A stretch of 64,000 bases of DNA. Origin: Macrostomum lignano (taxonomy: Eukaryota). The stretch spans positions 372,001 through 436,000 of the forward strand of contig NIVC01000591.1 of the NCBI GenBank assembly GCA_002269645.1, given 5' to 3'. Both the position numbers and the translations under genes were made by a program. The notes under the pieces were generated by a model that saw nothing but the letters and a program-made list of their open reading frames with translations, was not told the DNA's origin and ran no database searches. Below are positions 36,091 through 63,895 of the stretch, piece by piece (the stretch's first letter is position 1; each line of letters starts with the position of its first letter).

Positions 36091-37271
36091 AAATACGTAC
36101 GAGCAGAGAGTATTTGAGGGGTAGAAGATCTTGGCGAGATTGTTTAAATCTCAAGATCAAGCTAGCCTGTGAAAAACAACCCGTGCAAACTGTGGCTCAT
36201 TAAACTAGCTGTCTAAAAATCGAATGTTGGACAAAAGAGCACGCTAAACTTAACCTAGCTGCTGTCTGTAACTCGTGTTTTTTCATGTAGCTTAATTATT
36301 TCGATCTCGTGAAGTCAAAACTAATCTGGCCAAATCATAAATCATGGTGTCAAGCAATTGCTGCCCTGCCTAGACACTAAATAATAAATTCTTCATTAAT
36401 GAAGCCATCCTGACGCCTGCGTCAGCACTTGAGTACATTAGTATCAAGTTTTTAGTAGTTTAGTAGTTTTTAGTTGTTTTTAGTAGGGACGCAGCCCGGT
36501 TAAAATACATTTCATGGTTGCGTTTGATAAGTTTTATTGCTATTCCTAGACCTCTATTCAGTCTATCAGTCTTTCAGTCCTTTCTTTATCAATGATGGTA
36601 CCTTCTCCTGGTCATCTCCTGGTGTCGTCTGGGTCTTCTCAATCTCCGTCCATCTTCAAATTATCTCCATCTCGCCCCGTTGCCAGGGGGTCCGCGGCCG
36701 CCATCGGTCGCTTATTTTCCCCGGGTCTGCCCCTCCGCTCCTGTCTCGTTTGGGTCGGGCTGGGTGCTGGCTGAAATGAAGGGTTGGGCTCAGAGCGTGC
36801 CCTCATCTCTTATTCTAGAGTCCGTTGTACTCTTCCCTCCGCTTGCTATATTTATCCTCAAGTTACTTTTCTGGTCTTAATTCCTTTCAGATTTCTAAAC
36901 TTGTACATGGAATATCACTGGACAGAGGCAGAGGGTTGGAGTAAGAAGACCGTGTACGCTCTCATTAAACTCTTATCATCGTACAATAAATGAAATTCTA
37001 AAAATCTTCTACTCTCTTTTATTTTTCTGTACCCCACTGCGGAATAGCTCGCATTAGATGTACGTAGGAGCGTAGACATGACAGATAACACAGTTCATTG
37101 CATTCAGTAAGCCAAGCATTGCCGGTCCATTCTGTCCCCATCGGCAGGCTGGTTAATGTTCAACATTTTCTGCTTCAAATTGCCTTTACGTCGTATAGAT
37201 TTTCAAAGTCAATAATAAACAGAGACCAATCTGCAGCAGATTAAGCAATATCTGCAACGGGTTATCAAATT

Positions 37272-40200
37272 ATGCGAAGGTCTGCCGCTGAGCCGTCGGA
37301 CAAAGCTCTCGTGAGAGCTATAGTAACTAACGATCTAAAAACCATTGACGGCTTCACCTCCAACGCGAAGTCAGTTAACAGATCTGTGAGTATTGATGGC
37401 CACAATTTGACTCTAGTCATGCTAGCTGGCCAGTTTGAAAGGCATGAGATGTTGATGAAACTTATCAAAGCTAAGGCAGATGTTGACATTCAGACTGAAG
37501 ACGGAATCACGGCTTTGTTCATCGCCTCTCAGTATGGTTACAATCAAGTTGTCGAAACTCTTGTCAAAGCGCAAGCCGACGTCAATCTTCAACAAGTCGA
37601 CGGCGGCTCACCTCTCTACGTCGCAGCACAGCAGGGTCATCAGCTTGTCTCTGACTCACTCATCCGAGCAATAGCCGATGTGGATCTTCAAGAACTCGAA
37701 GGCTGCTCACCTCTCTATATGGCATCCCAGCTGGGTCATCTGCATGTCGTTAACTCACTCGTCAAAGCACAAGCCGACGTCAATTTGAAAGGAGCAAACG
37801 ACGAGTCACCTCTTTACATCGCTTCACAAAACGACCATCACCAAGTAGTTGACTCGCTTATCAAAGCACAAGCCGACGTCAATCTTCAGGCAATCCATGG
37901 AATATCACCTCTCTATATTTCCTCACAGGAAGGTCATCAACAAGTCATTGACAGACTTATCAAAGCACAAGCGGACGTAAACCTTCAACAAGCCGATGGC
38001 TGCTCACCTCTTTACATTGCAGCACAGCAAGGTCATCCGCATGTCGTAAACACCCTTATTGCAGCACAAGCCGATGTAAATCTTCAAGACATAGATGGCG
38101 CTTCCCCTCTTAATATTGCATCGCAGAATGATCACGTTAAAGTCGTCGACTCACTTATTAGGGCAAATGCCGACGCCAATCTTCAAGATAATAACGACTG
38201 CTCACCTCTTTACAATGCGTCACAAGAAGGCCACAGCAAAATCGTTGATTTGCTTATTAAAGCGCAAGCAGATGCCAATCTTCAGAGGGACACTGGCGAG
38301 TCACCTCTCTTCATTTCTTCAAGAAGTGGCCATCAAAGAGTGGTGGACTCACTCATCAAAGCACAAGCCGACATTGATCTTCAAGACGACGATGGCTTGT
38401 CCCCTCTCTACATTGCATCAAAGTATGGTCATGTAAAAGTTGTCAAGACACTTATCAAGGCACAAGCTGACGTCAATCTTCAGCAAGACACCGGTGAGTC
38501 ACCTCTATTCGTGGCATCGCAGAATGGTCATCACCGTGTCGTCAAGTTACTCATCGAGGCACAAGCCGATGTCAGCCTTCAGCGAGACACTGGCGAGTCA
38601 GCTATCTACATGGCAGCACAGAACGGTCACAGTCGTGTCCTCCAGTTGCTCATTCCTGCAGTCTGCAGCACAGGAAGTTTAAAAAAGCTGATAAAGGAGG
38701 CACTGTTTAGAGCTCAGGAATTCGATCAATTTAAAGCCGCTTCAATGCTTCAATCGGCTTTGAATGGCGTCTCAATCAGGAAGCACGTAAAGCTGCAATC
38801 AATAAAGTGAGTTTCTAAAATAAGTTAGATGGTTTTTATATTCAATATTTAGCCATATTTTGCATAGCTATGCTACATTGAATCTGGTGTTTGATTGTTT
38901 TACAAGATTAAACTGCAGTAGTTATATTGACGCTCGTACGCTTGAACTACTTGACTCTTTAAGGAAAAATGATAAAAAAATTTAGTGAATCAAGCAATAA
39001 AGCCAAACCCTGTTCAACCCTCAGAGCCGCCGCCCCCACCGCCCCCAGCGACGCAGAGCTGAGCCAGCAGCTGCACCAAGCGCTCAATCAATCGGGATTC
39101 GTGGACTCCAGAGCCGCATTGCAGAGCGCCGTGGCTGATGCGCTGCAGGACATTTTGAGAAGCAGATTGGATGATGACAAGTACCATGTGGTAGGCAGCT
39201 TCTCCGAGGGCTGGGGCAACAGTCTTACAACTCTTGATGGCAGAACAGCCATGGAATCTGATATAGATGTGATGCAGCTGTTAACTGGACAGCCAATTCA
39301 TCTGAGGCATCTGTGCAAATGCGCTAGTTCGACCAATCCAACGATGGAATACAGCAATGGACATATCATAAACCCCGGATATGGTAAGATATGCTTGAAG
39401 CAGTCCCAGATTAGGAACATGGACAATGCTTTCTCGAAAGTTTTGACGTATGTAGCTATTTATTACGAGGTAATACCGGGCAGCTTAATTTTCCACATAC
39501 ACGCATTACCGACATACTAACTAAACTTTCCAAACTTCTTGTACAAATTTCAGCCTCAAAACCATCGAAAGCAGAGGGAGGATCCAAGCTGAGACCTGCC
39601 TTTGACAACGTTGACGCCCGACGACTCTGCCGCTACCCGCCCATTGCGCCGCTACTCAACAACCGAGTCTCCGACTCAAACATCCCCCAGTCCGTGTTGC
39701 AGTCGCTCCAGCATCTCCTCACCTCTGCCTCATCGCCCTGTCACGTGGTGCACGCAGCTGCTCCCGGAAAGGAGGGCCAGCAGCTCCGAGTGAGCACCAG
39801 CTTCCTGGAGAGGCGGCTGCTGCGGAGTCTCAACACTCTGCAGGGCCAGCTGTTCGTCACGCTCAAGTGGCTGCTGAAGAAGGCCGTCCGACACGACGGC
39901 TTCAAGTCGTATCACGCAAAGACCATCACGTTCCGAATGCTGGAGGAGACACCGGCCGAGCAGTGGAGCGACGCTCGGAATCTTGTGAGTCTCGCGAGAC
40001 GCTCGCTGCAGATGCTTGAGAGCGACTGCAGATCAGGCGGACCTGACGCCAAGATCATGGACCACTTCTTCCTTCGCGATGCCGCTGTGTACCTGAGAGG
40101 CGTGGACACCAGCACATCGGCTGAGAAGGTGAGCGAAGCCTTGAGTCAGGCGGCCGATGCAGTGAGAGATGCGATTGATAGGCTGCCTGAGCTGCTGCTG

Positions 40201-41013
40201 GAGTTCGAGGACAGCCTGCGACCCGTCACCGACTCGGGCCGATTCCACTTCCACCCGTTCCTCATCCTGCCGCACATGGAAGCTGATCGACCTGTGTCAC
40301 AAGCGAAGGAATGCGAGTACCACGAGATCTATGACGTCGTGAGAGAGTCGGTGCTCCGTGTGTCAGACCGAGACCGAAGCCCAGAGTCCCGACAGCGTCT
40401 CTTGGAGCTGATCGGCAAGCTGCCAGACTGCGCCCGCTCGGCGCGAGAGTCTCTGAGGGCGCTGAGCTGCCTGAAGTTCGGCGACAGAGAGGCTGCAGCG
40501 AAAGTCGTGAGCGACTGCAGGCAGTTTAGGGCGAGCAGAGGCATCGACTGGTCCGCTGAGAGATCGGCGAGTGAGGCGACTGCGGACTTCGTGATGCAGC
40601 ACCTGAGGAGCCGAGACTCCGCGTGGAAATTCTGCTTTTGGTTTGACGAGCAACCAGATCTTCAGATAGAAATTGATTTTATCAGAACATTCTTTCCAGT
40701 CGAAATGGAGAATTACAGAACGTACTTCTTTGTGAATTTTGACGCTCTTCTTCAGGCCCTATGCTTTGAGCTGCTAGGGACAGGAGACTCAAACAGTGAA
40801 AATTGGATACGTGATGTTGCGCTGTGTAAAGATGCTGTTGATGAGCAAGAGCTGCTGGTTGCGTCCTATGGCTGCGAAGATGTGGAACTGTTGCGTCTCC
40901 TTCGAAATAAGAGCGTCAGGGTGTTTGGAGACGTGCCACAAAGGCTGGATCTGAAGATGCAGTATTTGTCAGGTGAGTTCGAACCGAAGGCCAAGAAGGC
41001 GAGACTGGAGTAG
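37272..41013 (+). CDS. Ankyrin-repeat / Mab-21 (cGAS-like receptor, cGLR) nucleotidyltransferase fusion, copy 1 (1117 aa)
   Basis: join(37272..38806,39025..39383,39554..41013) = 3354 nt, in frame. Donors AA|GTGAGT (phase 2) and G|GTAAGA (phase 1) match acceptors ccctcag|A and tttcag|CC. About 13 ANK repeats, then GSFSEG...[30 protein letters not shown]...[20 protein letters not shown]. Confidence 0.85.
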
Positions 41014-41789
41014 CTTAGTCAAACCAATGAGGTGCACATAAAGAAAGGGAAATTTGTCTGATCTGTCAGGCTCTGCATGTACGAGCTACATTGGGGCTTT
41101 GCTACTTTCATTTAGTTGATCTTTTGTTTTGTACCTAGTGTACAACTTATATTTTTTTATAACTGAACTGAAGACGCTTGTAATTTCCCTAATCTACCTT
41201 AATGATAGATACAATTCTTTGCAAATAAATCTGAGATCAACCTGAGTTTATTGTATATTTCAACTTATTCAAAAATTTATGAAATCAAGTAATTTTAGTT
41301 TTGTTATTAAAATTACTCTTAGTTTAATGCCGCTAAAAGTATAAAACCCTAGAAAATCAATAAATCGACTATAGTACAACTCTGCCTGAGCATGCTAATC
41401 TAAAACACTTTGAAAAGCTGCAAGCTTTTTGTGAGACTACCAAGCACACTGGCCTCTAAAGGCCCTGTTATGAGTGTGAGGCTCTTATCTTAGAATTCGC
41501 CATACCGAATATTATTACTCTGTGAGTATTAGCTGTGTCACGCGATAGCAGGCTGCTGGCTTGGCCCTCAAACCTCAGCTTCGCTATTGTCCTTTAGGGA
41601 TTGAGGTGGGCTAGTCTGCAGCTGGTCTGTTTGAGTAGCTTTGGTCGAGACGCCCAGAGGTTGTTTTTTTCCGCTCCGATGTGAGCAATTTTCCAGTGCT
41701 TACAAGCTACGCTCACAGATTTGTAAGACTCGCAGATATACCGAGATATTCTCTTATGAGTCTATTTGATGTTCTTATGATGGGTAATT

Positions 41790-42052
41790 AGCGATTCTTC
41801 ATCACTCTTCCAGCTTCCAGCTGGGTGATTAGCGATTCTTCATCACTCTCCCAGCTGGGTGATTAGCGATTCTTCATCACTCTCCCAGCTGGGTGATTAG
41901 CGATTTTTCATCACTCTCCCAGCTGGGTGATTAGCGATTCTTCATCACTCTTCCAGCTTCCATCTGGGTGATTAGCGATTCTTCATCACTCTTCCAGCTT
42001 CCAGATGGGTGATTAGTGATTCTTCATCACTCTTCCAGCTGGGAGATTAGCG
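41790..42052. repeat. 34/41-bp minisatellite (GGGTGATTAGCGATTCTTCATCACTCTCCCAGCT)n
   Basis: About 7 units. Confidence 0.92.
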
Positions 42053-42429
42053 ACAAAACGGTGGCAGGATTCGCAGTTATAAAATGTGACCCGGGCTTAA
42101 TTGATTGAGGAACCATTTTGAGTTGAAGAGATTTGGTGACCTCTATATGAGTTTTTACTTTTAATTTTTGTTCCATTCTCCAGGTACAATATTGTGCTAC
42201 AGTTTAACGAGAAAACAGCAAATTGAAGTTACATAATTTGAGTCTTTAACTTGGACTCAATGCCAAAACATTATTAATGTTTTTAATACTGGATGAGGTT
42301 TTACCCAACGCTGAAAATGACAAAAATGAATGCAATTACGCTTGTACGAATGCATTTTCGCCCCAGTTTCTCAGCTTTATAATTTATGGCCTGCGAGTGC
42401 CTGGACGAGTACTCACTGGGTGGCGGTTT

Positions 42430-42900
42430 AGAACACAGCTGCTCAAAGCGGCCGAGACACTCGGCTCTTAAGGCACTAAAATATCAGGCGAAGCTGCAGC
42501 ATGCAGAGTCTGAGACCGTCGCCATGACAACCGACCGAACGCTAAGCCGCAGATGAAGCTTGAGACGTAGAGGGAGTGGGGAGAGTTTGTGGGTGGCGAC
42601 GCAGAGCTCTGCCAGTTGTTTCAATAGCGCCTGAGAGGCTGGAAAGAATTGCGCAGTTGCGCTGAGATGAAGGACGATCGAAGAACTGTTGCACTGCTTT
42701 CTATTATTTCTTCTTCCAATTGTAAAGCAATAAAAAACTCTGGGTTTTTGCGTTTGGAGAGACAGCAGTGCAGCCCTGGGCAGAAAATCTGAATTGGTTA
42801 GAAAGCTGAGTATGGGGCGACTTCGATCTCAAGCAAGTCAGCCTTTGTTATTCTGGATGGGGCCGTGCCAGATAAAAGTTTGAGACTATGTAAACATTGA
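42430..42900. promoter_or_regulatory. Conserved non-coding block A with RFX X-box-like motif GTCGCCATGACAAC (42518-42531)
   Basis: Alignable by eye with 52527..53000; lies about 0.8-1.3 kb upstream of the copy 2 ATG. Confidence 0.5.
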
Positions 42901-43734
42901 CAAAGTTGAGACGTGCGTTAAAATGGGTGTTATGTAGACAAGTGTCATCCAGACAGGTGTTAGGCAGACAGGTGTTATGCTGACAGATGTTATGCAGAAA
43001 AGTGTTATGTATACTTGTACATGTATTATGCAGATAAATGTTATATGATGCATGTAATGCAGACAGGTGTTTTTCAGACATGTGCCATGCAGATATATGT
43101 TAGATATAGATACATGCCCCTGTCTGTTATGCAATTGATTAGAATTGAACCCAAATTGAACGATTCATCACTTTATTCATCACGATTCATCTTATCAATG
43201 ACGATTTCCCTTTGATGATGAGACATAAGTACTGTTTCTATTAATCTTTAACGGTTTTAATAATGCACTAAAGAGAAAAATGAATTTGAGTTAAAGAGAT
43301 GTTGTAGACAACACTTGTCTATATTTGAATCAATGTTTTCACAGGCCCAAGGGACAGTAGCATGCTGGCTTCCATGAATGCCGCACCCAAGGACTACTGT
43401 TGTTTTCTTAAAAAAACTTGACAAACATTTGAAATCGTTTATATTTTTGTCAGTGGTCACTCACTGTTGTCAAATTTTCTACAGTAGAAATATAAATTTA
43501 ACCGAGAGAAACTGGAAGACTAACAGCCAGCCAGCCACTGCATCAGCACTCACTCATTGGTTCATAGTCTGCTTAATTATATTTTCTGCCCACACATTCT
43601 GTTTAAACTTTTCAACTGCGGCCTTCTTAAGGTCTGAAAGCCCAAAAGCAACCATAAGCCAAAACACATGCAAGGCACGTTCAGTCAAGCTGAACAGTAT
43701 TCGGTAACTAAGCAAGACACACAGGCCCATTGCC

Positions 43735-46700
43735 ATGCGATTCCTGGAATGGCTGCTGAATTTCGTGGGCGCCTTCTGCATGCCCGTGTTCGAGTCCGGA
43801 TCTGACGCAGAGCTCTCGGACGAAACTCTCATTAAAGCGATTGCTTTAAACGACCTACATACAATTGGCAGATTTGTTGTAAGAACTAAGAATGTCGACA
43901 GGGTTGTAAAATTTAATGGAAAGAAGTTGACACTCGCTATGGTGGCAAGTCTTTTTGACAGACACGAAATATTAATACCACTTACATGTATTTCAGCAAA
44001 AGCGAATCTTAACAAACAAACTGAAGATGGAATCACAGCACTGATAATTGCATCAGAGCAAGGTCATGAAATAATGATTGACTCACTCATCAAAGCACGA
44101 GCCGACGTCAATCTTCAACAAAACCAAGGCGGATCCCCTCTTCACATTGCATCACAGAATGGTCATCACAAAGTGATTGAGTCACTCATCAAAGCAGAAG
44201 CCGACGTCAATCTTCAAGACATTGAAGGCAGCTCACCTCTCTACATTGCATCACAAAAAGGCCATCACAAAGTAATTGAGTCACTCATCAAGGCACAAGC
44301 CGACGTCAATCTTCAACAAAACCAGGGTTGCTCACCTCTCTACATTGCAACACAGAATGGCCATCACAAAGTGATTGAGTCACTCATCAAAGCACAAGCC
44401 GACATCAATCTTCAACAAAACCAAGGCGGATCACCTATTCACATTGCATCACAGAAGGGTCATCAAAAAGTGATTGAGTTACTCATCAAAGCTCAAGCCG
44501 ACGTCAATCTTCAACGAAGCACTGGTGCGTCACCACTCTACCTTGCATTACAAAAAGGTCATCAGAAAGTAATTGAGTCATTCATGAAGGCGCACGCAGA
44601 CGTCAATCTTCAACTCAACACTGGCGAGTCACCTCTCTACATTGCATCACATAATGGTCATCACAAAGTAATTGAGTTACTCATCAAAGCACAAGCCGAC
44701 GTCAATCTTCCGGAATTCAAAGGCTGCTCACCTCTCTACATAGCATCACAGAATGGTTATCACAAAGTAATTGAGTCACTCATCAAAGCACAAGCCGACG
44801 TCAATCTTCAACAAAACCAAGGCGCATCACCTCTCTACATCGCATCACAGAATGGTCATCAAAAAGTCATTGAGTCACTCATCAAAGCACAAGCCGACGT
44901 CAATCTTCAACAAAACCAAGGCTACTCACCTCTCTACATCGCATTACAGAATGGTCATCAAAAAGTCATTGAGTTACTCATCAAAGCACAAGCCGACGTC
45001 AATCTTCAACAAAACAAAGGCGCATCACCTCTCTACATCGCATCACATTTCGGTCATCACAAAGTAATTGATTCACTCATCAAAGCACAAGCCGACGTCA
45101 ATCTTCAACGAAGCACTGGCGAATCACCTATCTTCATTGCATCACAGGAAAATCATCACAAAGTGATTGAGGCACTCATCACTGCACAAGCCGACATCAA
45201 TCTTCAACAAAACCAAGGCGGATCACCTATTCACATTGCATCACAGAATGGTCATCAAAAAGTGATTGAGTTACTCATTAAAGCACAAGCCGACGTCAAT
45301 CTTCAACAAAACCAAGGCGGATCCCCTCTTCACATTGCATCAGTTTTTGGTCATCACAAAGTAATTGAGTCACTCATCAAAGCAGAAGCCGACGTCAATC
45401 TTCAAGACATTGAAGGCAGCTCACCTCTCTACATTGCATCACAAAAAGGCCATCACAAAGTAATTGAGTCACTCATCAAAGCACAACCCGACGTCGATCT
45501 TCAAGCAAACTCCGGCTGCACACCTCTCTACATTGCATCACAGGATGGTCATCACAAAGTAATTGAGCTACTCATCGATGCACAAGCCAACATCAATCTT
45601 CAACAAAACCAAGGCTGCTCACCTCTCTACATTGCATCACAGAATGGTCATCACAAAGTAATTGAGCTACTCATCGATGCACAAGCCAACATCAATATTC
45701 AACGAGACACTGGCGAGTCTCCTTTTTACATTGCATCAAATTATGGTCATCAAAAAGTGATTGAGTTACTCATCAAAGCACAAGCCGACGTTAATCTTCA
45801 ACAAAACCAAGGCTGCTCACCTCTCCACACTGCATCTGCAATGGGTCATCACAAAGTAATTGAGTCACTCATCAAAGCACAAGCCGACGTCAATCTTCAA
45901 GACTTTGAAGGATGGTCGCCTCTCTACATTGCATCACACAATGGTCATCACAAAGTAGTTGAGTCACTTATCAAAGCACAAGCTGACGTCAATTTTCAAA
46001 CAAACACTGGCGAGTCACCTCTCTACATTGCATCCCAGAAAGGTCATCACAAAGTCATTTACGCACTTATTAAAGCGCACGCGGATATTAATCTTAAATC
46101 TACGGATGGCAGCTCACCTTTTGAAGTTGCATCACAGAATGGCCATATTGAGGCCTTAAAGGTGCTTATTCAACATGCCTGCGCTGCGGTCACTCATTCT
46201 GATTATTTACAGGCCGCTTTTAATCGAGCTCAAGAACTGGAAGACAATGAGACTCCACGGATGCTGACTCAAGCCATGAGTAGGCATTATCGACAGCTTT
46301 TGGCTTCGTTGCCTTTGAAGAGGTAAGATACGGTATTGTAACGTAACCGCGATTAGACAGTACTTCAGCGGGTCCAGTTCGGCTCTAGTGATGATGTTTA
46401 GTTCAGTCGACGAAGCTTTTGACCGTATAGTCTTTGGGTTACCTGGCGATTACATTGAAAATAGAATAGCTGAAAGAAAAACGTCTGTTAGCTTGACTTG
46501 TGGCAATATCACTCGAGAAATAAAATAAAAAGCTGCTGCATCTTATTTTTATATTAAATTTAATTTTTTGAGCCCAGAACAACTGACACCAAGCTTCAAA
46601 GCTGACTTGATGTGAAGAAAATATCCAAAATGCAGGCGGATTGTATGAGAGTTCTCAAAGAAGAAAAATTGTCTGTAAACTCGCTTCTTATAATTTCCTG

Positions 46701-49700
46701 TTAATCACATGACAGATTTCGTTTCACTTATCCCGCAGAGCCGCCTCCAGCGACGCAGAGCTGAGCCAGCAGCTGCACCAAGCGCTCAATCAGTCGGGAT
46801 TCGTGGACTCCAGAGCCGCCTTGCAGAGTGCTGTGGCTGATGCGCTGCAGGACATTATGTGGAGAAGACTCGAGCATAACTTATTCGTTGTGGGCAGCTA
46901 CTCTGAGGGCTGGGGCAACAGCTTGGCTACTCTGGATGGCAGAACTGACCCTGACTCCGACATTGACGTGATGCGGCTGATATCAGGAAGCAGCATCCAC
47001 CTGAGAGATCTGTGCGAGTGCGCTGCTACGGAGACTGAAACAGTGGAGTACAACAATGGACACGTGTTGTATCCCGGATACGGTGAGAGCGATGTCCTTA
47101 ATGTCCTGACATTACCATGGTAAATATATTGGTTAGAGTGTGGCGATTTTAAACTCGCTTAACAAGATTATAAATCTGTAATTTTGACTTCCAATCCCCG
47201 GAAGTACTTTAGCATGTGTTCTAAAACCTGGTCATACTCAAACCTAGAACAAAAACTTGTTATTGATAGTTAGGATAGAGGTGAACAAAACTTGGAATAT
47301 ATTCATGTTTGTCAGTGATGTACTTGTAACTGTATTTTATTGAATGCTCACATGCACCCCAATCACACCGTCGCCCCCAATCATGTTCGCTGCTATCGAC
47401 TGCTCAGCCCGCCTCGCCCCTCGCTTGACTGATGCATACTCTATATATGCTTTATGATTCCCTTGACAAATACATGTTTTCTCGGGGTCGCACGTTCACA
47501 ATCACAATATACTAAATCTCTAAGATCCGACCGGTATTTCAGTCTTCACAATATACTAAATCCGGCCCCCTATACTAAATCTCTAAGGTTTGTATGTTTG
47601 ATTGTCCATAATCATAATCAGAATATACTAATCCAAATATACTAAATCTCTAATTTTATACTATTGTTGTGCCCGGGTACATTTGCACCGATGAGCAATC
47701 TCTGACTCTCAGTCAAGTGTGCCCGGCACTGCACTCCTAACCCTCCCGGCCGTGTGCCTGCGTCAACTGCGTTGGTTTGTGACTGGTCTTGCTTGACTAG
47801 TCAATAACCAGTTTTAAACTCCTCTCCTCTGCCCTGCCTTGTGTCGCTTTGCGTACGTTCTCCCTCTCCCTCTGTCCGCTCTGTGTGGGGGTTCTTGGCT
47901 CTGAGTGCGTGGGGTGGTGGTCCGGTGGGGTGTGCTTTAGCCTCTGCGCCGTCGCCCGTTTTATTGGCGTCTCGCTCAGTTGACTCTGCGTTTTTTGGTT
48001 GCCTGTGCGAGCTTAAATTTTTCCGCGCATCCCCTTTCGAGCCAATGCTGCTCTTGATTCTCCTTTTGGGTTTAACCCCCATTCTGTCTGCGTCAACCCC
48101 CCCCCCCGGCCCCCTCAATTTTGTCTGCGTCAAACTCTCCAGATACACCTAGCCCTCGGTTTACCCCCGATTCGCCGATTCCCGATTCGCCGATTCCCGA
48201 TTCGCCGAATTCCCGATTCGCCGATTCCCGATTCGCCGAATTCCCGATTCGCCGATTCCCGATTCGCCGAATTCCCGATTCGCCGATTCCCGATTCGCCG
48301 AATTCCCGATTCGCCGAATTCCTGATTTGCCGAATTCCTGACTCGCCGAACCTTCCAGTTTCTAATTGTACGACGCCACTGGTGGAAGTGGATGCATGCC
48401 AGGTGGGCCGGGTTGTGATTGGCCAGCTCTGGAGGCTCTCCTGCCTAGCCCTGTCCGCACGCTCGTATACGAGTATAAGGGCCAGATTTCCAGTTGAGGC
48501 AGTCACACTTTATAAATACAACTTAACACGTGACATAATAAGTTTTTTGCCACAAGAGTTTATTACATATTTTCTATCCTTTTATCTGAACTTTCCACAG
48601 CTGTTGTCACCTACAGTAATAATAATAATACAAATAATACAATTTTAATACAATCCAACATACAATATTACAATAATATAACTACAATAATAATTGTCTC
48701 CAAGTCTGATCCCCGGAAGCACTTGTTCAGCTGATGGTGCGCCTGTGTATGTGCGTGTGTGAGTGGACGGTCAATGTGGTAATCGGCGAGTCAGGAATTC
48801 GGCAAATCAGGAATTCGGCAAATCAGGAATTCGGCAAATCAGGAATTTCGGCGAAGCAGGAATCGGCGAATCGGGAATCTGCAAATCGGGGGTAAACCGG
48901 TATTTATTGCCTAGGGTGGCAGCGTTGGAAGCGCTCGTGAGTTTTATCTCAAGTTGCGCCAGCCAAATTCAGCCAGCCAGTTTCAGTCATTAAGCGTTGA
49001 GTAAGTTGCTTCTTTTCATTCTGAAGGCTGGATACTTGTATTGTATCAGGGCTATTAGGGACGGACCGATCAGAGTTACGACGCGATCCTCCGCACTTAT
49101 CTCGATGTCGGTCCGGCCAGAGGACCGCAGCTATCTCCGGCTCGTCCTTTGACGCTCGGAATTACGGAATTCGATTAGGCTGGTCACAACACTATCGACA
49201 AAAAATAATACAACAGACTATTACGCTCGTACGACCACGCAACTATATTTTCAAAATCAGGAAATATTCGGTTAGAGCAATCTAACTGAATATTTTTAAG
49301 TAAGGAAGTGGATTAATAAGTAGCTTTTAAGTAGGACAAGCTGTTGGGGGGGGAGGGCGTAGCCCAGCGGTAGCGCAGCTGCTCTGGTGTGCCAGCGACC
49401 CAGGCTCGATTCCAAGTGCAGTCACATTAATTTGGGGCTGAATTGGAATCTCGGCTTGGCTCTGCTCGTGCAATTAACGGCCTTGAGAGCCAACCCCCAA
49501 GGCGCAGTGAAGTGTACATGCCTAACGATAATATAAAGTTAGGGCCGCTGTACACTCCTGTGTGAGTGTGTGCCTGCGTACGTATCCGCGCGCTTGTATG
49601 CCTGCTCAGGGGAGTCGGCGGAATGGGCAGTAATGCCTCGCTTAAAGTGCGCCAGGGTGCACACAACCCCCTGCCTCTAATAAAATAAGGACAAGCTGTT

Positions 49701-51863
49701 GACACCCGCAGATTTTAAAACCCACTGAAGTCCTATCCATAATAAAAATCACCGTGTGCGTAGACTCTACACAGTGCGTCTGTTTGCCGCATTCCTGGAT
49801 GACCAGAAAAAACAGCCGCTTTAACTCGTAGTTTTTAATTTTACTTAGAGGCGTTCCATACCTGAAGTGGTACGTGGGTATCTGATGGTATAGCGAGGCT
49901 CTGGCAAAGGCATCTTTAGCGCAAAAATTGAAAAAGGCCGTGACTGTAGTGTTTGCGAGCGTTCATTATAGTCGTGAGGATGAATATACCATACAATATT
50001 CGAAATATCGACACTTGCATGCATTAAACACATCTGCGTTACCGCTTCAGTGTTTTGGGGTTTGAGGAATCTTCTCTCCGTCCCTCTCTCCCCTCTTCTT
50101 CTTTCTCTTCGCTCCTCTCTCTTCTCCACTATCTCTCCTCTCCTCTCGCTTCTCTTTCCCCTTTTCTCTTTTTCTCTTTCCTCACTCCCCTCTTCTCATT
50201 ATCATCCTCTATATTTTCTCTCATGACATCTTGAAATCGCGTCTCCTCTCTTATCTAATAATCGTCTATTCATTTTCCTTTCCACTTTTATCTGGCCCGC
50301 AGCCATGGGCTGGATTCTTTGTCTGGCCCTCTTAGCAAGTGTCATGTGAACATTATTTTACATTTTATTGCGTCAACGCGCTAATAGCTCGTAAACCCAA
50401 TCAAACGAATTTCAGCCTCAAAACCATCAATAGCAGAAAGAGGATCCAAGCTGAGACCGGCCTTTGACAACGTAGTCGCCCGACGCCTCTGCTGCTACCC
50501 GCCCATTGCGCCGCTACTCAACAACCGAGTCTCCGACTCAAACATCCCCCAGTCCGTGCTGCAGTCGCTCCAGCATCTCCTCACCTCTGCCTCATCGCCC
50601 TGTCACGCAGTGCACGCAGCTGCTCCCGGAAAGGAGGGCCAGCAGCTCCGAGTGAGCACCAGCTTCCTGGAGAGGCGGCTGCTGCGGAGTCTCACCACTC
50701 TGCAGGGCCAGCTGTTCGTCACGCTCAAGTGGCTGCTGAAGAAGGCCGTCCGACACGACGGCTTCAAGTCGTATCACGCAAAGACCATCGCGTTCCGAAT
50801 GCTGGAGGAGACGCCGGCCGAGCAGTGGAACGACGCTCGGAATCTCGTGAGTCTCACGAGACGCTCGCTGCAGATGCTTGAGAGCGACTGCAGATCAGGC
50901 GGACCTGACGCCAAGATCATGGACCACTTCTTCCTTCGCGATGCCGCTGTGTATCTGAAAGGCGTGGACACCAGCACATCGGCTGAGAAGGTGAGCGAAG
51001 CCTTGAGTCAGGCGGCCGACGCAGTGAGAGATGCGATCGATAGGCTGCCTGAGCTGCTGCTGGAGTTCGAGGACAGCCTGCGACCCGTCACCGACTCGGG
51101 CCGATTCCACTTCCACCCGTTCGTCATTCAGCCGCACATTTTAAGTGATAAACCTGTGAAACAAGCGAAGGAATGCGAGTACCACGAGATATACGACGTC
51201 GTGAGAGAGTCAGTGATCCGTGTGTCGGACCGAGACCGAAGCCCAGAGTCCCGACAGCGTCTCTCGGAGCTGATCGACAAGCTGCCAGACTGCGCCCGCA
51301 TGGCGCGAGAGTCTCTGAGGGCGCTGAGCTGCCTGAAGTTCGGCGACAGAGAGGCTGCAGCGAAAGTCGTGAACGACTGCAGGCAGTTCAGGGTGAGCAG
51401 AGGAATCGACTGGTCCGCTGAGAGATCGGCGAGTGAGGCGACTGTGGACTTCGTGATGCAGCACCTGAAGAGCCGAGACTCCGCGTGGAAGTTCTGGTTT
51501 AAATTGGATGAGCGGCCTGAGCTGCCAGTTAAAAGCATAGCTTCAACTTTTTTTCCAAGAAATGCAGGATACTACATCTCTTCGTACTTTTTCAACTTTG
51601 AGGCCCTGCTGTTTGCACTCCAATTTGATCTGATTGGAGCAAGAGAATCTTCAGATCAAGACTGGATCCGAAATGTGGCGCATGATGAGGATGCGGATGA
51701 TCAGGAGCTGCTTGTGGCTTCTTTTTATTGTTTTTATTGTAAAGATTCTGAACTGCTGCGTGCTTTCCGTAAATCACTCAGCAAAAGGTTTGGCAAAGTT
51801 CCTACTTGGCTGGAGCCAAGTTTCTGGAATTTATTTGCGTCTGTAAGTTCACTTTGGAACTGA
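43735..51863 (+). CDS. Ankyrin-repeat / Mab-21 (cGLR) nucleotidyltransferase fusion, copy 2 (1459 aa)
   Basis: join(43735..46322,46739..47082,50416..51863) = 4380 nt, in frame. Donors AG|GTAAGA (phase 2) and G|GTGAGA (phase 1) match acceptors cccgcag|A and tttcag|CC, at the same intron positions as copy 1. About 23 ANK repeats; GSYSEG...SDIDVM, FDNV, KSYHAKT. Confidence 0.85.
48157..48899. mobile_element. Foldback/MITE-like element with internally repetitive terminal inverted repeats
   Basis: Left arm 48157..48349 CGGTTTACCCCCGATT(CGCCGA[A]TTCCCGATT)n...CCTGACTCGCCGA. Right arm 48783..48899 is its reverse complement (TCGGCGAGTCAGG...AATCGGGGGTAAACCG). No clear TSD. Confidence 0.75.
49347..49687 (+). 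mobile_element. tRNA-derived SINE with 14-bp target-site duplication
   Basis: A-box TAGCCCAGCGG (49360-49370), B-box-like GGCTCGATTCC (49403-49413) and A-rich tail CTCTAATAAAATA. Direct repeat AGGACAAGCTGTTG at 49333-49346 and 49688-49701. Confidence 0.8.
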
Positions 51864-54246: not shown

Positions 54247-57200
54247 TCAGTCTCCAAGGCATTCGTTATCCATCGGGTCGTGAGCTCTGATCGACAGCTC
54301 CAAGTCATCGATGAGGCACAGAATTCGCTTGCATGCCGCGTCATCACAGCTGGTTGCCGCATCCCCAGACTCTTCATCAGCCGAGTCCCCAGCTCCATCA
54401 TCGAGCAGTCGGCATCGCTCATCCAGTCGGTGCAGCGCCAGTCTCAAACTGACGCCAAGACCTTCATCAGCGATCCCAGCTTCGCCCAGACGGTCGAGAG
54501 CGGCTGACACGGCGGCTCGAATGTCCGGCAGGCCGTCAAGTGGCAGACGGTCGGATTCGCTGCCGCCACCAGCCGCTGCAGACACCAGCTGAGCAAGGCT
54601 CCTGACCACTTCCGGTGGCGCACAATTTCCAGGATCGGCGAGAAGATCGCCAGCAAATTTGGCTGCAGCGTGAGCAGCTTCCGGTGCCAGTGAACCGCTG
54701 GCTGCATCGGCTTTGGCGCTGCGACAGAGAGTGCAGATGCCAGCTTGAAGTCGGGCGTTGTTCAATGATTTGCTGCTGGTTTTCGTTTCCGGTTTGACCT
54801 TTGTAATATTGGTACTTCCGGTGACGACTGAGTTCCAAATGCTTAAGTCTGTTGATTGGTTAACTTGTTCATTTCCGGTTGAGACACCTTGTCCACTTCC
54901 GGTTGAGTCACCTTGTCCACTTCCGGTTGAGTCACCTTGTCCACTTCCGGTTGATTCACCTTGTCGACTTCCGGTTGAGTCACCTTGTCCATTTTCGGTT
55001 GAGTCACCTTGTCCATTTCCGGTTGAGTCACCTTGTCCGTTTCCTGTGGAGGCACCTTGTCCACTTCCGGTTGAGACACCTTGTCCACTTCCGGTTGAGT
55101 CACCTTGTCCACTTCCGGTTGAGTCACCTTGTCCACTTCCGGTTGATTCACCTTGTCGACTTCCGGTTGAGTCACCTTGTCTATTTTCGGTTGAGTCACC
55201 TTGTCCATTTCCGGTTGAGTCACCTTGTCCGTTTCCTGTGGAGGCACCTTGTCCACTTCCGGTTGAGACACCTTGTCCACTTCCGGTTGAGTCTCCTTGT
55301 CCACTTCCGGTTGAGTCACCTTGTCCACTTCCGGTTGATTCACCTTGTCGACTTCCGGTTGAGTCACCTTGTCCATTTTCGGTTGAGTCACCTTGTCCAC
55401 TTCCGGTTGAGTCAGCTTGTCCACTTACGTTTTCCTTCCGGTTCCACTCTCCGGTTACACTCCTGATCTCACTTCCGGTTCCAACAAGGCAGTCGCGAAG
55501 GCACAGAAACAGGGCAGCGTCCGGCCCCACGCCAGTCGCCGTGTCCGAGGCGGCCGCAATCAGACCGGCCAAAGTGTCCGGACTCGGACAGCTGGCCGAG
55601 AAGTAGGCCAAAGCAGCGTCGCGAGCTGTCGGTCTGGAGGCTGCGGACAGGCAGAAGTCGTCTGCCTTTTGAGGAGTTAGAAAAGTTTATTTTTATTTGT
55701 CATTAACAGCCAATTCTAATCGGTTATTAACAGCCAATTCTAATTGGTCATTAACAGCCAATTCTAATCGGTTATTAACAGCCAATTCTAATTAGTCATT
55801 AACAGCCAATTCTAATTGGTCATTAACAGCCAATTCTAATCGGTTATTAACAGGCAATTCTAATCGGTTATTAACAGCCAATAATTATAATTGGTCATTA
55901 ACAGCCAATTCTAATCAGTCATTGACAGCCAATTCTAATTGGTCATTAACAGCCAATTCTAATTGGTCATTAACAGCCAATTCTAATCAGTCATTAACAG
56001 CCAATTCTAATCAGTCATTAACAGCCAATTCTAATTGGTCATTAACAGCCAATTCTAATCAGTCATTAACAGATAATTCTAATCGATCATTAACAGCCAA
56101 TTCCAATTGGTCATGCATTAGGTCATAAACTAAGGTCATAACTCCCAGCAGTGAACTCCGGCCCCCTCACCAGCTTCTTAGCAGTCCCTGGCAGCCGCAG
56201 GAAGAGGCCTCTCCTGGCCAAGTCAGCCAGCGTCAGGGTTTTACTACGGTAATCCCAGCTCCCATCGGAGGACAGAAACTCAACCAGATCTTCCCGCAAT
56301 TTCCCAGCCGGAACTGCAACTTCAAGAATCAACTCCAAAGCCCTTTCGAAGCCTCGAGTTCGGGAAAATTTCGGAGCAGAAGAGAAATACAGCAGCCGTT
56401 TGAGCAGTTGGATTCGAGCTGGTGAAGTGAGACCAGAGGACCAGGATGTCACGGTGTCCGGTTTTAATGCGGCCAGCACCAACACGGATTCAGTGGGCCA
56501 AGACTCAGTAGCCTCCGCTGGTGCTGGCAGTGAGATCAAATTTGAGTCTAATATAATTCTAATTTGGTTAATAGTTGAGCAGGTGGCAAAGAGCATATTG
56601 CAGACTGTTTCCATTAGGATGTCTTCTGGTAGATTGGCTGTGCAGGCTGGAGTTTGCTGGGATCTGAAAGTGCGATTGGATTGGGAATAAATGTTCACAG
56701 CGAATTGCTTATAAGGTTTCTAAATAGAATAAAAAATTGTAAGTACACAAGAGAGTTCTGAGAAAGTACATGGTAGACTTTTAGTTTTCTAGAAACTAAG
56801 CGACACGACAAATTTCTTATTCGTTACAAAGTACACGACGGACTTTTTATTCTCTAGATAGCACACGACGAACTTATCGATCTCCAGAAAGTACACGACG
56901 AACTTTTAATTCTGTAGAAAATACACGACATACTTTTCATTATTTAGAAAGTACAAAACGAACTTTTCATTCTCTAGAAAGTACACGGCGAACTTCTTTT
57001 TGCTAGAAAGTTTCTGCATTTATGGACTTCCTAATCTTTACCGACATTATTTTCTAAAATTACACAACGCAGTAGCAAATTATAGAATAGAATAATCAGG
57101 ACATTCTTTCGAATGCCTAGAATTTTTCACTCACCGAGTCCACACGTGCGCCAGCGCCAGGCACAGCGCAGCCCTGGCGTGCAGGTTGCCAGTGACATCT

Positions 57201-57880
57201 GGCCGGGTTAGGGCGTCGGCCAGAGCCGCAGCCAGGCCGGCCCAGTCGGAGGCATCGAACCGGTCAGCTGCCGATGCGGACAGCCGCCAGCACAGCACAT
57301 CGGCGCCGATCCTGGCTTGCCGAGGCCGGCCAGACCGAAGCGAATTAAGCAGGGCGCCAACTAGCAGGGATTTGGCTTCATTGGCCACCTGCGGCATGGC
57401 TGCTGGCTGTGGGATCAATGAGGGTGAGGGTGATCCCAGTGCTGCCTGAATGATCCCAGTGCTGCCTGAATGATCCCAGTGCTACCTGAATGATCCCAGA
57501 GCTGCCTAAGTGATCCCAGTGTTACCTGCACTCCAAAGCCAGGACAGAATCCCTACAAAGCTACACTAATCAGCACTGCAGCCTCACCTCAGAGGTGAGG
57601 ACAGCCTCAGCCACAGGCAGGTACAGCGGCAGCAGCTCAGCATGCTGCTCAGCACCGGATCCGCAATCCGATTTTCCAACAGCAGCCTGACAATATCTCC
57701 TCAGAATAGCCAGCAGATGCTCTGCCTCATCAACTGATGAAGGACTCAGCTTCACAGAGGACAGCTCGGCAGCCAGCTGCTGCACAAGGCTGTCGTCAAG
57801 GTGCTCGGAGAAGGCGAAGGTCAGACTGTCGAGCAGGCGGCAGAGCCTGCGGCCGACACTCGCGGCATCGGAGGCGGCTG
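54247..57880 (-). CDS. Helical-repeat protein, THADA/Trm732-like N-terminal region (5'-incomplete), with an internal octapeptide repeat
   Basis: complement(join(54247..55665,56171..56663,57135..57388,57588..57880)); all phases agree (0,2,0). WDYRSKTLTLADL, SPDTLAGLI and DAALFLCLR resemble, from memory, THADA WHIKGKYTCLGCL, SPESLQYMV and GALMACLR. The gene model is firmer than the family call. Confidence 0.6.
54868..55432 (-). repeat. Coding 24-bp repeat (STGSGQGD)n, ~23 units with an 8-unit (192-bp) higher-order period
   Basis: The unit series STENGQGD-STGSRQGE-...-STGNGQGD recurs every 64 aa inside ORF 54247..55611. Confidence 0.9.
55700..56112. repeat. 24-bp intronic minisatellite (TTAACAGCCAATTCTAATTGGTCA)n
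   Basis: About 17 units in intron 55666..56170. Confidence 0.93.
57436..57528. repeat. 20-bp intronic repeat (TGATCCCAGTGCTGCCTGAA)n
   Basis: 4-5 units; same family as 62098..62201. Confidence 0.9.
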
Positions 57881-58007
57881 CTGGGGAAAACAGCAACAAT
57901 TTATGGGAGTTTTATACTACTCAAGCTTCCCTTGTGAGTAGTGCGGTACTTTTTATCGTTTTCTATCGACATTTATGTTACATGAAAGTTGGGAAATATT
58001 GGGATTT

Positions 58008-58340
58008 TTGGGATCTGTGCTCAGGGGATCAGGGATCTGTGCTCAGGGGATCAGGGATCTGTGCTCAGGGGATCAGGGATCTGTGCTCAGGGGATCAGGG
58101 ATCTGTGCTCAGGGGATCAGGGATCTGTGCTTAGGGGATTAGGGATCTGTGCTCAGGGGATTAGGCCGATCTGTGCTCAGGGGATCAGGGATCTGTGCTC
58201 AGGGGATCAGGGATCTGTGCTTAGGGGATTAGGGATCTGTGCTCAGGGGATTAGGGATCTGTGCTCAGGGGATTAGGGATCTGTGCTCAGGGGATTAGGG
58301 ATCTGTGCTCAGGGGATTAGGGATTTGTACTCAAGGGATC
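58008..58340. repeat. 22-bp minisatellite (GATCTGTGCTCAGGGGATCAGG)n
   Basis: About 15 units. Confidence 0.94.
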
Positions 58341-63669: not shown

Positions 63670-63724
63670 CTGCAGGTTAATTCAGTTTCTCTGGTCTAAG
63701 TTTAGGAGTTGCTGAGTGCGTGTC

Positions 63725-63895
63725 ACCCTTGGTGCTGGCGCCCCTTGGTGCTGGCGCCCCTTGGTGCTGGCGCCCCTTGGTGCTGGGCGCCCCTTGGTGC
63801 TGGCGCCCCTTGGTGCTGGCGCCCCTTGGTGCTGGCGCCCCTTGGTGCTGGCGCCCCTTGGTGCTGGCACCCCTTGGTGCTGGCGCCCCTTGGTG
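63725..63895. repeat. 17-bp GGCGCC-core minisatellite (CCCTTGGTGCTGGCGCC)n
   Basis: About 10 units. Confidence 0.94.

What the first reader, a model, noticed from the sequence alone, without database searches (positions are those of the whole stretch)
37272..51863. Tandem pair of ankyrin-array / cGAS-like (Mab-21) nucleotidyltransferase fusion genes: candidate modular innate-immune sensor-enzyme system
Seen in sequence: each ankyrin ORF ends at a phase-2 donor (38806|GTGAGT; 46322|GTAAGA) that matches a phase-2 acceptor (39025; 46739). A second phase-1 intron (39384..39553; 47083..50415) joins the rest, giving uninterrupted 1117-aa and 1459-aa proteins with identical intron positions. The C-terminal half has the Pol-beta NTase motif GS..EG...SDIDVM, a third acidic residue (FDNV), and Mab-21 motifs [15 protein letters not shown]...SYHAKT, EETP..W, DHFF. 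Established: cGAS/cGLR/OAS enzymes with this triad make nucleotide second messengers in innate immunity, and invertebrate cGLRs often expand in tandem. RNase L uses ankyrins to sense the OAS product 2-5A. Inference: the ankyrin array is a built-in ligand-recognition or autoinhibitory module that gates second-messenger synthesis. I know of no functional characterisation of such a fusion, but cannot search to confirm novelty.
Basis: partly seen in the sequence, partly recalled or inferred. Interest (0 to 1): 0.93.

Follow-up and report, generated by a model that had tools for sequence, protein, structure and literature searches.

The report
Ankyrin-fused cGAS-like enzyme genes, flatworm
Two neighbouring genes of the flatworm Macrostomum lignano each fuse a long ankyrin-repeat array to a cGAS-like nucleotidyltransferase with an intact catalytic motif; the gene models are correct but already annotated, and they belong to a large flatworm-specific family that a 2023 cGLR survey already sampled without finding its function.

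Summary
Both three-exon models (GT..AG introns, phases 2 and 1) translate to 1117 and 1459 aa. The second is letter-for-letter GenBank BOX15_Mlig034192g1, on this same contig. The first differs by 13 substitutions from BOX15_Mlig030155g1.

The genome is Macrostomum lignano. The C-terminal half folds as cGAS/Mab-21: the AlphaFold2 model has pLDDT 88 and all top Foldseek hits are cGAS, MAB21L1 or Sp-cGLR1. In a profile alignment, cGAS's GS loop and acidic triad fall on G569/S570, D591, D593 and D649, and these residues are conserved across paralogues.

After the NTase comes a roughly 245-aa domain with a confident model but no fold match in the PDB. The ankyrin arrays have 12 and 22 repeats and vary most at the canonical ankyrin binding-surface positions.

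The family has at least 88 loci in this genome (662 candidates), mostly ANK-fused, and some paralogues carry a caspase. No STING was detected.

Novelty is limited. Li et al. 2023 already reported ANK-cGLR fusions and cloned five M. lignano members, none of which is flagged active. An immune role and second-messenger synthesis remain inferred.

The parts
37272..38806 (+). g1 exon 1. It holds the start codon, an N-terminal cap, 12 regular 33-aa ankyrin repeats (residues 68-463, nt 37473-38660) and a helical linker. It ends at a phase-2 GTGAGT donor.
   Evidence: Pfam Ank_2 E 7.7e-119. TRF 99-nt period, 10.8 copies. Repeat register.
38807..39024 (+). g1 intron 1 (218 nt, GT..AG, phase 2). It contains an in-frame ATG ([19 protein letters not shown]) that could give an NTase-only product if the intron were retained. 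g2 has no equivalent ATG.
   Evidence: The UniProt model P0040 starts inside this intron.
39025..39383 (+). g1 exon 2. It encodes the spine helix and the first NTase beta-strands, with G569/S570 (39194-39199) and D591-I-D593-V (39260-39271).
   Evidence: G, S, D and D are invariant in the family alignment and align with the cGAS GS loop and E225/D227.
39384..39553 (+). g1 intron 2 (170 nt, GTAAGA..TTTCAG, phase 1).
   Evidence: g1/g2 homology resumes 11 nt before the acceptor.
39554..40272 (+). g1 exon 3, first part. It encodes the rest of the cGAS-like core: the third acidic residue D649 (39604-39606, in FDN 39601-39609), [19 protein letters not shown] and DHFF (the Mab-21 C-lobe).
   Evidence: AF2 pLDDT 87.9. 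Foldseek top hits are all cGAS/MAB21L1/Sp-cGLR1. hhalign to cGAS prob 96%, E 4.6e-9. Pfam Mab-21_C 15.1 bits, below the 24.1 cut-off for g1 but met by paralogues.
40273..41013 (+). g1 exon 3, second part. It encodes a roughly 245-aa family-specific C-terminal alpha/beta domain with no recognisable relatives, followed by the stop codon (41011-41013).
   Evidence: AF2 pLDDT 83.9, pTM 0.83. No PDB fold match (best E 0.54). No Pfam hit. Conserved in paralogues. dN/dS 0.28-0.43.
43735..46322 (+). g2 exon 1. It holds the start codon, a hydrophobic Cys-rich N-terminal peptide, 22 regular ankyrin repeats (residues 89-814, nt 43999-46176) and the linker. It ends at a phase-2 GTAAGA donor.
   Evidence: TRF 99-nt period, 20.3 copies, 82% matches. 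Identical to GenBank P0045.
46739..47082 (+). g2 exon 2. It encodes the NTase N-lobe with G915/S916 (46893-46898) and D937-I-D939-V (46959-46970).
   Evidence: 78% nt identity to g1 exon 2.
47083..50415 (+). g2 intron 2 (3333 nt, phase 1). It is enlarged by a 16/31-nt tandem repeat (48166-48350) and a roughly 340-bp dispersed repeat (about 49348-49690).
   Evidence: The dispersed repeat has 2064 candidate copies in the genome at 90-94% identity.
50416..51863 (+). g2 exon 3. It encodes the rest of the NTase core (D995 at 50466-50468), the Mab-21 C-lobe, the orphan C-terminal domain (from about 51150) and the stop codon.
   Evidence: 89.5% nt identity to g1 exon 3. C-halves are 80% identical in protein.

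Best explanation
These are two adjacent members of a Macrostomum-specific, massively expanded branch of the cGAS-like receptor (cGLR / Mab-21) nucleotidyltransferase superfamily.

Each protein has four parts:
1. A variable-length ankyrin array (12 or 22 repeats).
2. A short helical linker.
3. A cGAS-fold NTase that keeps the GS loop and the [DE]h[DE]h...h[DE]h metal-binding triad.
4. A roughly 245-aa family-specific C-terminal domain of unknown fold class.

Shown here: the gene structure, the fold, conservation of the catalytic motif, purifying selection, and diversification concentrated on the ankyrin binding surface.

Inferred mechanism: the concave ankyrin surface binds a non-nucleic-acid ligand, either a foreign or a modified-self protein or a small molecule. 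Binding gates the NTase. The NTase then makes a nucleotide-derived signal that is read by a receptor other than STING. Different paralogues, with different ankyrin surfaces, would recognise different ligands, so the family would act as a diversified sensor repertoire.
For: - Gene models: exact or near-exact match to GenBank proteins. Homology between the two genes is restricted to exons.
- Fold: AF2 pLDDT 87.9, pTM 0.88. The top 50 Foldseek hits are all cGAS, MAB21L1 or Sp-cGLR1, prob 1.00, E down to 2.6e-7. A family profile hits cGAS in the PDB at E 3.8e-5. hhalign to mollusc cGLRs gives prob 98.9%, E 2.7e-16, and to cGAS plus cnidarian cGLRs prob 96%, E 4.6e-9.
- Catalytic motif: G57/S58/D79/D81 are invariant and D137 is present in 10 of 11 paralogues. 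They align to the cGAS GS loop, E225, D227 and D319. The 55-aa spacing fits the X50-90 rule of Li et al.. 103 of 119 family sequences that have the GS loop keep a DxD.
- Selection: dN/dS is 0.28-0.43 across the NTase and the C-terminal domain.
- Ankyrin surface: the most variable repeat positions (8, 9, 10, 12, 20/21 in the QADVNLQxxxGxSPLY register) are the canonical ankyrin target-binding positions (their identity as binding positions is from established DARPin/ankyrin knowledge).
- Expansion and clustering typical of immune receptor families: at least 150 Mab-21_C loci; 88 scored loci of 662 candidates, 80 of them without stops; a third clustered copy.
- Paralogues fused to caspase domains link the family to cell-death and defence modules.
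- The proteins are acidic to neutral (pI 5.8-6.6), which argues against direct nucleic-acid sensing and for ankyrin-mediated sensing.
Against: - No enzymatic product is known. Five relatives cloned by Li et al. carry no 'active' note in Table S3, although those assays used only dsDNA and poly(I:C).
- No STING was found with the Pfam HMM or with human STING 139-341. Flatworms are reported to lack STING. A downstream receptor is therefore unidentified.
- The NTase N-lobe does not reach any Pfam threshold.
- I could not superpose the three Asp in 3D because no coordinates are accessible. The mapping rests on profile alignment and secondary-structure order.
- I examined no expression or infection-response data.
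Confidence: 0.6

Rival explanations
1. NLR-like scaffold. The Mab-21 domain binds a nucleotide as a conformational switch or oligomerisation platform, as MiD51 and MAB21L1 bind ADP or CTP, rather than making a diffusible messenger. Ankyrin-sensed ligand would trigger assembly. The output would go through the orphan C-terminal domain, or in some paralogues through a caspase fused in cis.
For: - The tripartite repeat / nucleotide-binding / effector layout of the paralogues NTase-ANK-caspase and ANK-NTase-ANK-caspase.
- No STING.
- No activity flagged for five relatives.
- One caspase-fused paralogue (P0122) has lost the DxD (NDIN).
- A conserved C-terminal domain of unknown role.
Against: - Near-universal retention of GS + DxD + D over paralogues that are only 30-40% identical is hard to explain without catalysis.
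- P0100 and P0189 keep a DCDM motif.
- Known scaffold Mab-21 proteins have degenerate triads (established knowledge).
Confidence: 0.2
2. A non-immune nucleotidyltransferase family. It might, for example, modify RNA ends or proteins, or have a germline, neuronal or adhesive-gland role. It would have expanded through the repeat-rich, partly polyploid M. lignano genome, with the ankyrin array simply serving as a localisation or partner-binding module.
For: - Weak similarity of the N-terminal helix/GS region to the MTPAP-like palm domain (E 0.025).
- Single-copy genes appear three times in this assembly, so part of the copy number is ploidy.
- No immune data exist for this family.
Against: - The structural neighbours are cGAS/cGLR, not poly(A)/TUT polymerases.
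- 662 candidate loci far exceed a threefold ploidy effect.
- Diversification at the binding surface and caspase fusions fit defence better.
Confidence: 0.15
3. Annotation artefact. The ankyrin ORF and the NTase ORFs are separate genes or transcripts (M. lignano uses trans-splicing), and the fusion exists only in gene models.
For: The UniProt model P0040 starts inside g1 intron 1 and runs on into g2, which shows that messy transcript models exist at this locus.
Against: - The exon phases match in both genes, in a third neighbour and in more than 20 paralogue models.
- g2 exon 2 has no in-frame ATG before the spine helix, so it cannot be translated on its own.
- P0040 itself contains the g2 ANK-to-NTase junction (LPLKR|AASSD).
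- GenBank models match exactly.
Confidence: 0.03

Closest known systems
Animal cGAS-like receptors (cGLRs), including the ANK-repeat-fused cGLRs catalogued by Li et al. 2023 (e.g. in Stylophora pistillata)
   Same: - The bilobal cGAS/Mab-21 fold.
- The GS loop plus the [DE]h[DE]h X50-90 h[DE]h motif.
- Lineage-specific tandem expansion.
- An N-terminal ankyrin fusion, which is an architecture already listed for cGLRs.
- Five M. lignano proteins of this same family were in that paper's screen.
   Different: - No product or ligand is known.
- The core is acidic to neutral rather than basic.
- There is an extra roughly 245-aa C-terminal domain with no fold match.
- The genome has no detectable STING.
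- The N-lobe is too divergent for Pfam PF03281.
- ANK fusion is the rule here rather than a rare exception.
OAS / RNase L pathway
   Same: It pairs a Pol-beta-type NTase of the same superfamily with an ankyrin array. In RNase L the ankyrin repeats bind the NTase product 2-5A (established knowledge).
   Different: - Here the ankyrin array and the NTase are in one polypeptide.
- No kinase-like or KEN RNase domain is present.
- The KEN domain occurs at only 3 loci in the genome, consistent with IRE1 copies.
MAB21L1/2, MB21D2, MiD49/51 (Mab-21 proteins without demonstrated synthase activity)
   Same: The same fold. MAB21L1 (5eom) is among the Foldseek hits. The genome has a canonical mab-21 at 3 loci.
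   Different: The window proteins keep the complete acidic triad and GS loop, whereas Li et al. describe the Mab21L1/2/3 genes as lacking a predicted functional active site. They share no detectable N-lobe sequence similarity with PF03281.
NLR/STAND-type immune receptors with repeat sensors, and bacterial CBASS CD-NTase operons
   Same: - Diversified repeat sensor plus nucleotide-handling core plus (in paralogues) a protease or death effector.
- CD-NTases share the catalytic fold.
   Different: - There is no NACHT/NB-ARC domain.
- The effector is fused only in a minority of paralogues.
- These are eukaryotic spliced genes.

Membership tests
cGLR / cGAS-Mab-21 nucleotidyltransferase superfamily | Bilobal cGAS-type fold (Pol-beta NTase core plus helical C-lobe) | tested here: met
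   AF2 model pLDDT 87.9. Foldseek top 50 hits are all cGAS, MAB21L1 or Sp-cGLR1, prob 1.00, TM (target-normalised) 0.48-0.58.
cGLR / cGAS-Mab-21 nucleotidyltransferase superfamily | Active-site motif: GS loop and [DE]h[DE]h X50-90 h[DE]h | tested here: met
   g1 has G569/S570, D591-I-D593-V, 55 aa, then F-D649-N. g2 has G915/S916, D937, D939, D995. The residues are aligned to the cGAS GS loop, E225, D227 and D319 and conserved in the family. The motif definition is from Li et al.. The last 'h' is Asn in g1 and g2 (Val/Leu/Ile in most paralogues).
cGLR / cGAS-Mab-21 nucleotidyltransferase superfamily | Sequence match to the Pfam Mab-21 models (PF03281 N-lobe, PF20266 C-lobe) | tested here: inconclusive
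   PF03281 gives no hit. PF20266 gives 15.1 bits for g1, below the 24.1 cut-off. All 11 aligned paralogues match PF20266 at E<=1 (best 6.9e-8), and at least 150 genomic loci are over the cut-off.
cGLR / cGAS-Mab-21 nucleotidyltransferase superfamily | Ligand-dependent synthesis of a nucleotide second messenger | not testable with these tools
   Five relatives (PAA86972.1, PAA45980.1, PAA57558.1, PAA93208.1, PAA68676.1) were screened by Li et al. Their Note column, which marks active enzymes, is empty for these rows.
cGLR / cGAS-Mab-21 nucleotidyltransferase superfamily | A STING receptor in the same genome | tested here: not met
   PF15009 gives 0 candidates at E<=1. Human STING 139-341, validated against the PDB, gives only a chance hit at E 2.1. 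The same method finds an exon-split KEN domain at E 1e-19. Absence is probable but not proven. It fits the literature on other flatworms.
Ankyrin-repeat proteins | Tandem 33-aa ANK repeats | tested here: met
   Pfam Ank_2 E 7.7e-119 and Ank E 1.1e-71. 12 and 22 repeats in register. 99-nt DNA period.
MAB21L-type inactive scaffolds | Degenerate catalytic triad | tested here: not met
   The triad and GS loop are intact and conserved.
RNase L-like 2-5A sensors | ANK array followed by a pseudokinase and a KEN ribonuclease | tested here: not met
   No kinase or Ribonuc_2-5A domain is in g1. PF06479 is found at only 3 genomic loci.

The most novel reading that the evidence does not exclude
Macrostomum runs a STING-independent cGLR system. 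Hundreds of ankyrin-gated cGAS-like enzymes would form a diversified receptor repertoire, analogous to NLRs, that recognises protein or small-molecule ligands. Its output would be read by a new receptor: possibly the orphan C-terminal domain, the ankyrin arrays of paralogues (RNase L-style), or caspases fused in cis. That would be a previously undescribed wiring of nucleotide-based immunity in animals.
Probability: 0.2. Interest if true: 0.8.

Novelty: new member of a known kind. Interest (0 to 1): 0.5.

Why it matters
Most animal cGLRs are orphans whose activating ligands are unknown. A fused ankyrin sensor offers a physical handle for finding a ligand, for example by pull-down with the array.

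[quoted passage not shown] 2014). A flatworm with hundreds of catalytically intact cGLR-like genes and no detectable STING would break that pattern and would point to another receptor.

M. lignano is a laboratory model with RNAi and transgenesis, so the question can be tested. The architecture and the family are already in the literature and databases, however. The value lies in follow-up work rather than in discovery.

Tried and rejected
- Pfam on the spliced C-halves gave no family at E<=0.01. A single-sequence PDB search gave only a marginal cGAS hit at E 0.03. Profiles and structure prediction were needed.
- hhalign in global mode against four coral cGLR fragments failed (prob 0.1), probably because the sequences were truncated. 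The mollusc and cGAS sets worked.
- The Foldseek search of the C-terminal domain found no hit at E<=0.001.
- The look-up of encoding contigs had no record for P0043 or P0045. The own-genome search was used instead.
- Rfam and tRNA scans of the window found nothing.
- Pfam scans of other long ORFs in the window showed they are minisatellite artefacts, apart from one DnaJ domain.
- I considered a transposon-borne origin for the expansion. I saw no transposase or reverse-transcriptase domain in or next to the genes. The only mobile-looking sequence is a short dispersed repeat inside g2 intron 2.
- The idea of separate ANK and NTase genes was rejected (see rival explanations).


Full report
**1. 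What is in the sequence**

The region holds long + strand ORFs at 37245-38810, 38963-39520 and 39415-41013, and at 43708-46326, 46713-47123 and 50388-51863.
- g1: 37272-38806, 39025-39383, 39554-41013.
- g2: 43735-46322, 46739-47082, 50416-51863.

This gives uninterrupted proteins of 1117 and 1459 aa. Both introns in both genes have GT donors and CAG acceptors. The intron phases are 2 and 1, and the intron positions are identical in the two genes.

**2. Are the gene models real?**

Three independent lines say yes.
- Nucleotide similarity between the two genes is confined to the predicted exons. Exon 3 is 89.5% identical, beginning 11 nt before the acceptor. Exon 2 is 78% identical. The introns and 5' flanks do not align.
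- The g2 translation is letter-for-letter identical to GenBank 'hypothetical protein BOX15_Mlig034192g1 [Macrostomum lignano]' (P0045, 1459 aa). That protein is annotated on a 749,959-bp contig, which is the length of the window's contig C591.
- g1 differs from BOX15_Mlig030155g1 (P0043, 1117 aa) by 13 substitutions and no indel. P0043 is on another contig. The second copy of the locus (98% identical at protein level over exon 3) lies on contig C1685.

More than 20 further annotated paralogues have the same ANK-linker-NTase order and the same residues at the junctions. A third gene with the same three-exon layout sits on the minus strand about 14 kb beyond the window's right-hand end.

g2 exon 2 has no in-frame ATG ahead of the first NTase helix, so it cannot be an independent coding unit. 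One UniProt model (P0040) is a chimera. It starts inside g1 intron 1, runs through g1 exons 2-3 and continues into g2. This shows that transcript models at the locus are untidy, but the model itself contains the g2 ANK-to-NTase junction. I had no RNA reads, so transcript support is indirect.

**3. The organism and the family**

All close protein hits are from the free-living flatworm Macrostomum lignano. The genome is 764 Mb in 5269 contigs.

The family is narrow. In a library of 1.84 billion representative proteins, only 142 clusters match the NTase half at E<=1e-3 and 70 match at E<=1e-30. All eight full-length relatives that I sampled are from M. lignano. The distant tail, which matches only the C-lobe at E about 1e-4, includes a bivalve protein.

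Within the genome the family is very large.
- Pfam Mab-21_C finds at least 150 loci above its cut-off, from 385 candidates.
- The g1 exon-3 protein finds 88 scored loci from 662 candidates. All 88 have E<=1e-131, and 80 have no stop codon.
- Loci are often clustered on the same contigs.

Single-copy genes appear three times in this assembly: canonical mab-21 and the KEN domain. Part of the family count therefore reflects ploidy, but not most of it.

**4. The NTase half**

Pfam does not recognise it. There is no PF03281 hit, and PF20266 scores 15.1 bits against a 24.1-bit cut-off. All 11 aligned paralogues do match PF20266 at E<=1, with the best at 6.9e-8.

An AlphaFold2 model of the spliced 605-aa C-half, built with a 24-sequence alignment, is confident (pLDDT 87.9, pTM 0.88). 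All 50 top Foldseek hits in the PDB are cGAS, MAB21L1 or the coral Sp-cGLR1 (prob 1.00, E from 2.6e-7).

Profile comparisons agree.
- Family profile against the PDB: cGAS at E 3.8e-5.
- hhalign against three mollusc cGLRs taken from Li et al. Table S3: prob 98.9%, E 2.7e-16.
- hhalign against mouse and human cGAS plus two cnidarian cGLRs: prob 96%, E 4.6e-9 over 280 columns.

In the last alignment the correspondences are:
- G569/S570 with the cGAS GS loop.
- D591 with E225 (human numbering).
- D593 with D227.
- D649 with D319.

The order of secondary-structure elements fits the Pol-beta fold: strand, GS, loop, a strand starting at D591, then a later strand carrying D649.

In the family alignment G, S, D and D are invariant, and the third Asp is present in 10 of 11 sequences. 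Of 119 family sequences with the GS loop, 103 keep a recognisable DxD by a crude pattern. The 55-residue spacing fits the X50-90 rule that Li et al. use to define active cGLRs.

**5. The other parts**

The ankyrin arrays have 12 (g1) and 22 (g2) regular 33-aa repeats. The g2 array is more homogeneous at the DNA level (82% against 67% matches), which suggests recent repeat gain.

Per-position entropy peaks at positions 8, 9, 10, 12 and 20/21 of the register [23 protein letters not shown]. From established knowledge of ankyrin and DARPin structures, these are the beta-turn and first-helix positions that form the target-binding groove.

After the cGAS-like core comes a roughly 245-aa alpha/beta domain. 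It is conserved across paralogues and confidently modelled on its own (pLDDT 83.9, pTM 0.83). It has no Pfam match and no PDB fold match (best E 0.54). Its role is unexplained.

dN/dS between g1 and g2 is 0.28-0.43 over the NTase and this domain, so both are under purifying selection. dS is mosaic: 0.076 in the core of exon 3 against 0.62 and 1.9 in the flanking parts. This suggests gene conversion between the neighbours.

The proteins are acidic to neutral (pI 5.8-6.6). Li et al. associate nucleic-acid-sensing cGLRs with high pI.

**6. Family context**

Annotated paralogues show other fusions:
- NTase-ANK-caspase (PAA59752.1, PAA80948.1).
- ANK-NTase-ANK-caspase (PAA93319.1).
- Models with WSC and RING domains, or with a zeta-toxin-like P-loop domain.

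Some of these may be merged gene models. The caspase fusion recurs in three models. This links the family to cell-death and defence modules.

**7. STING**

- The Pfam STING ligand-binding-domain HMM finds nothing in the six-frame translation at E<=1.
- As a method control, the exon-split KEN domain (PF06479) is found at three loci with E 1e-19.

Published surveys found no STING in other flatworms (Li et al. Table S5; Schmidtea, PMC13563047; Schistosoma, PMC4117786). Absence in M. lignano is therefore likely but not proven.

**8. What is already known**

Li et al. 2023 (10.1101/2023.02.22.529553, PMC9980059) make several relevant statements.
- Some cGLRs carry ankyrin-repeat modules. ANK fusions appear in their Figures 1C and S2A, in Table S2 and in S. 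pistillata.

Their Table S3 lists five M. lignano proteins (rows 89-93) with the same GSFxEGWG / SDxDV / LRVSTSFLE / YHAKT / HFF motifs as the window genes. It is empty for these five rows, and the main text never mentions Macrostomum.

The architecture and the family are thus catalogued but not characterised.

**9. Verdict**

The assignment to the cGAS/cGLR superfamily is well supported. The fusion is real and typical of a very large Macrostomum-specific family.

The functional reading is the best available explanation, at about 0.6 confidence, but it is inferred. In that reading, ankyrin-gated nucleotide signalling operates in defence and is read by something other than STING.

The main rival is an NLR-like scaffold role for the Mab-21 domain.

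Novelty is modest because both genes are in GenBank and the family and its ANK fusions were already reported. The points not described, as far as I could find, are the apparent lack of STING, the orphan C-terminal domain and the caspase-fused paralogues.

Noticed in passing
window 370-31869 and 54864-63895 (e.g. 5428-7331, 7921-9349, 19133-20173, 28046-29076, 30886-31869): The window is saturated with minisatellite arrays (45 TRF rows, units of 8-141 nt, up to 170 copies). They cause extreme GC skew and long ORFs open in three frames. These ORFs have no credible Pfam matches.
   Followed up: partly
window 26055-26843 (+): An ORF with a DnaJ domain (PF00226, E 8.4e-10). It is the only other coding signal I found in the window.
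   Followed up: no
window 47083-50415 (g2 intron 2), especially about 49348-49690 and 48166-48350: The 3.3-kb intron (170 nt in g1) contains a roughly 340-bp dispersed repeat with 2064 candidate copies genome-wide at 90-94% identity. It also contains a 16/31-nt tandem repeat. The dispersed repeat is SINE/MITE-like, with no tRNA or Rfam match.
   Followed up: partly
window 38963-51863; protein P0040: A UniProt model (1346 aa) is a chimera. It starts inside g1 intron 1 and covers g1 exons 2-3. It then continues into the g2 5' region (KKARLE|PIAMRFLEW) and through g2 with the ANK array collapsed. It also uses an alternative exon-3 acceptor (PGY|ERGSK). It could reflect read-through or operon-type transcription, or a transcript-assembly artefact.
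   Followed up: partly
paralogues elsewhere in the genome: P0100 (PAA59752.1), P0189 (PAA80948.1), P0122 (PAA93319.1): Members of the same NTase family are fused to a C-terminal caspase (Peptidase_C14) domain, with ankyrin repeats in between. P0100 and P0189 keep a DCDM motif, while P0122 has NDIN. Other models add WSC + RING or a zeta-toxin-like P-loop domain.
   Followed up: partly
G000:C591:450433-454000+ (minus strand; L008 6433-9999), outside the window: A third ANK-NTase gene with the same three-exon structure, convergent with g1 and g2. The second copy of the locus (contig C1685) carries four copies.
   Followed up: partly
window 39025-41010 compared with 46739-51860: Synonymous divergence between g1 and g2 is mosaic. 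dS is 0.076 in the NTase core part of exon 3, 0.62 in exon 2, 0.36 in the C-terminal domain and 1.9 in the tail. This suggests gene conversion between the neighbours.
   Followed up: no
window 43735-43791 (g2 N-terminus): g2 starts with a hydrophobic, Cys-containing peptide ([19 protein letters not shown]). The paralogue P0002 has a similar one (MGFLQRLFSAVAACCLRVF). g1 lacks it. It may be a membrane-anchoring or lipidation signal.
   Followed up: no
window 40273-41010 and about 51150-51860: The conserved roughly 245-aa C-terminal domain has a confident predicted structure but no Pfam or PDB relative. Its function is unexplained.
   Followed up: yes
whole genome G000: Single-copy-type domains (canonical Mab-21 PF03281, KEN PF06479) each appear at exactly three loci with near-identical scores. 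This is consistent with a triplicated or partly polyploid assembly.
   Followed up: no
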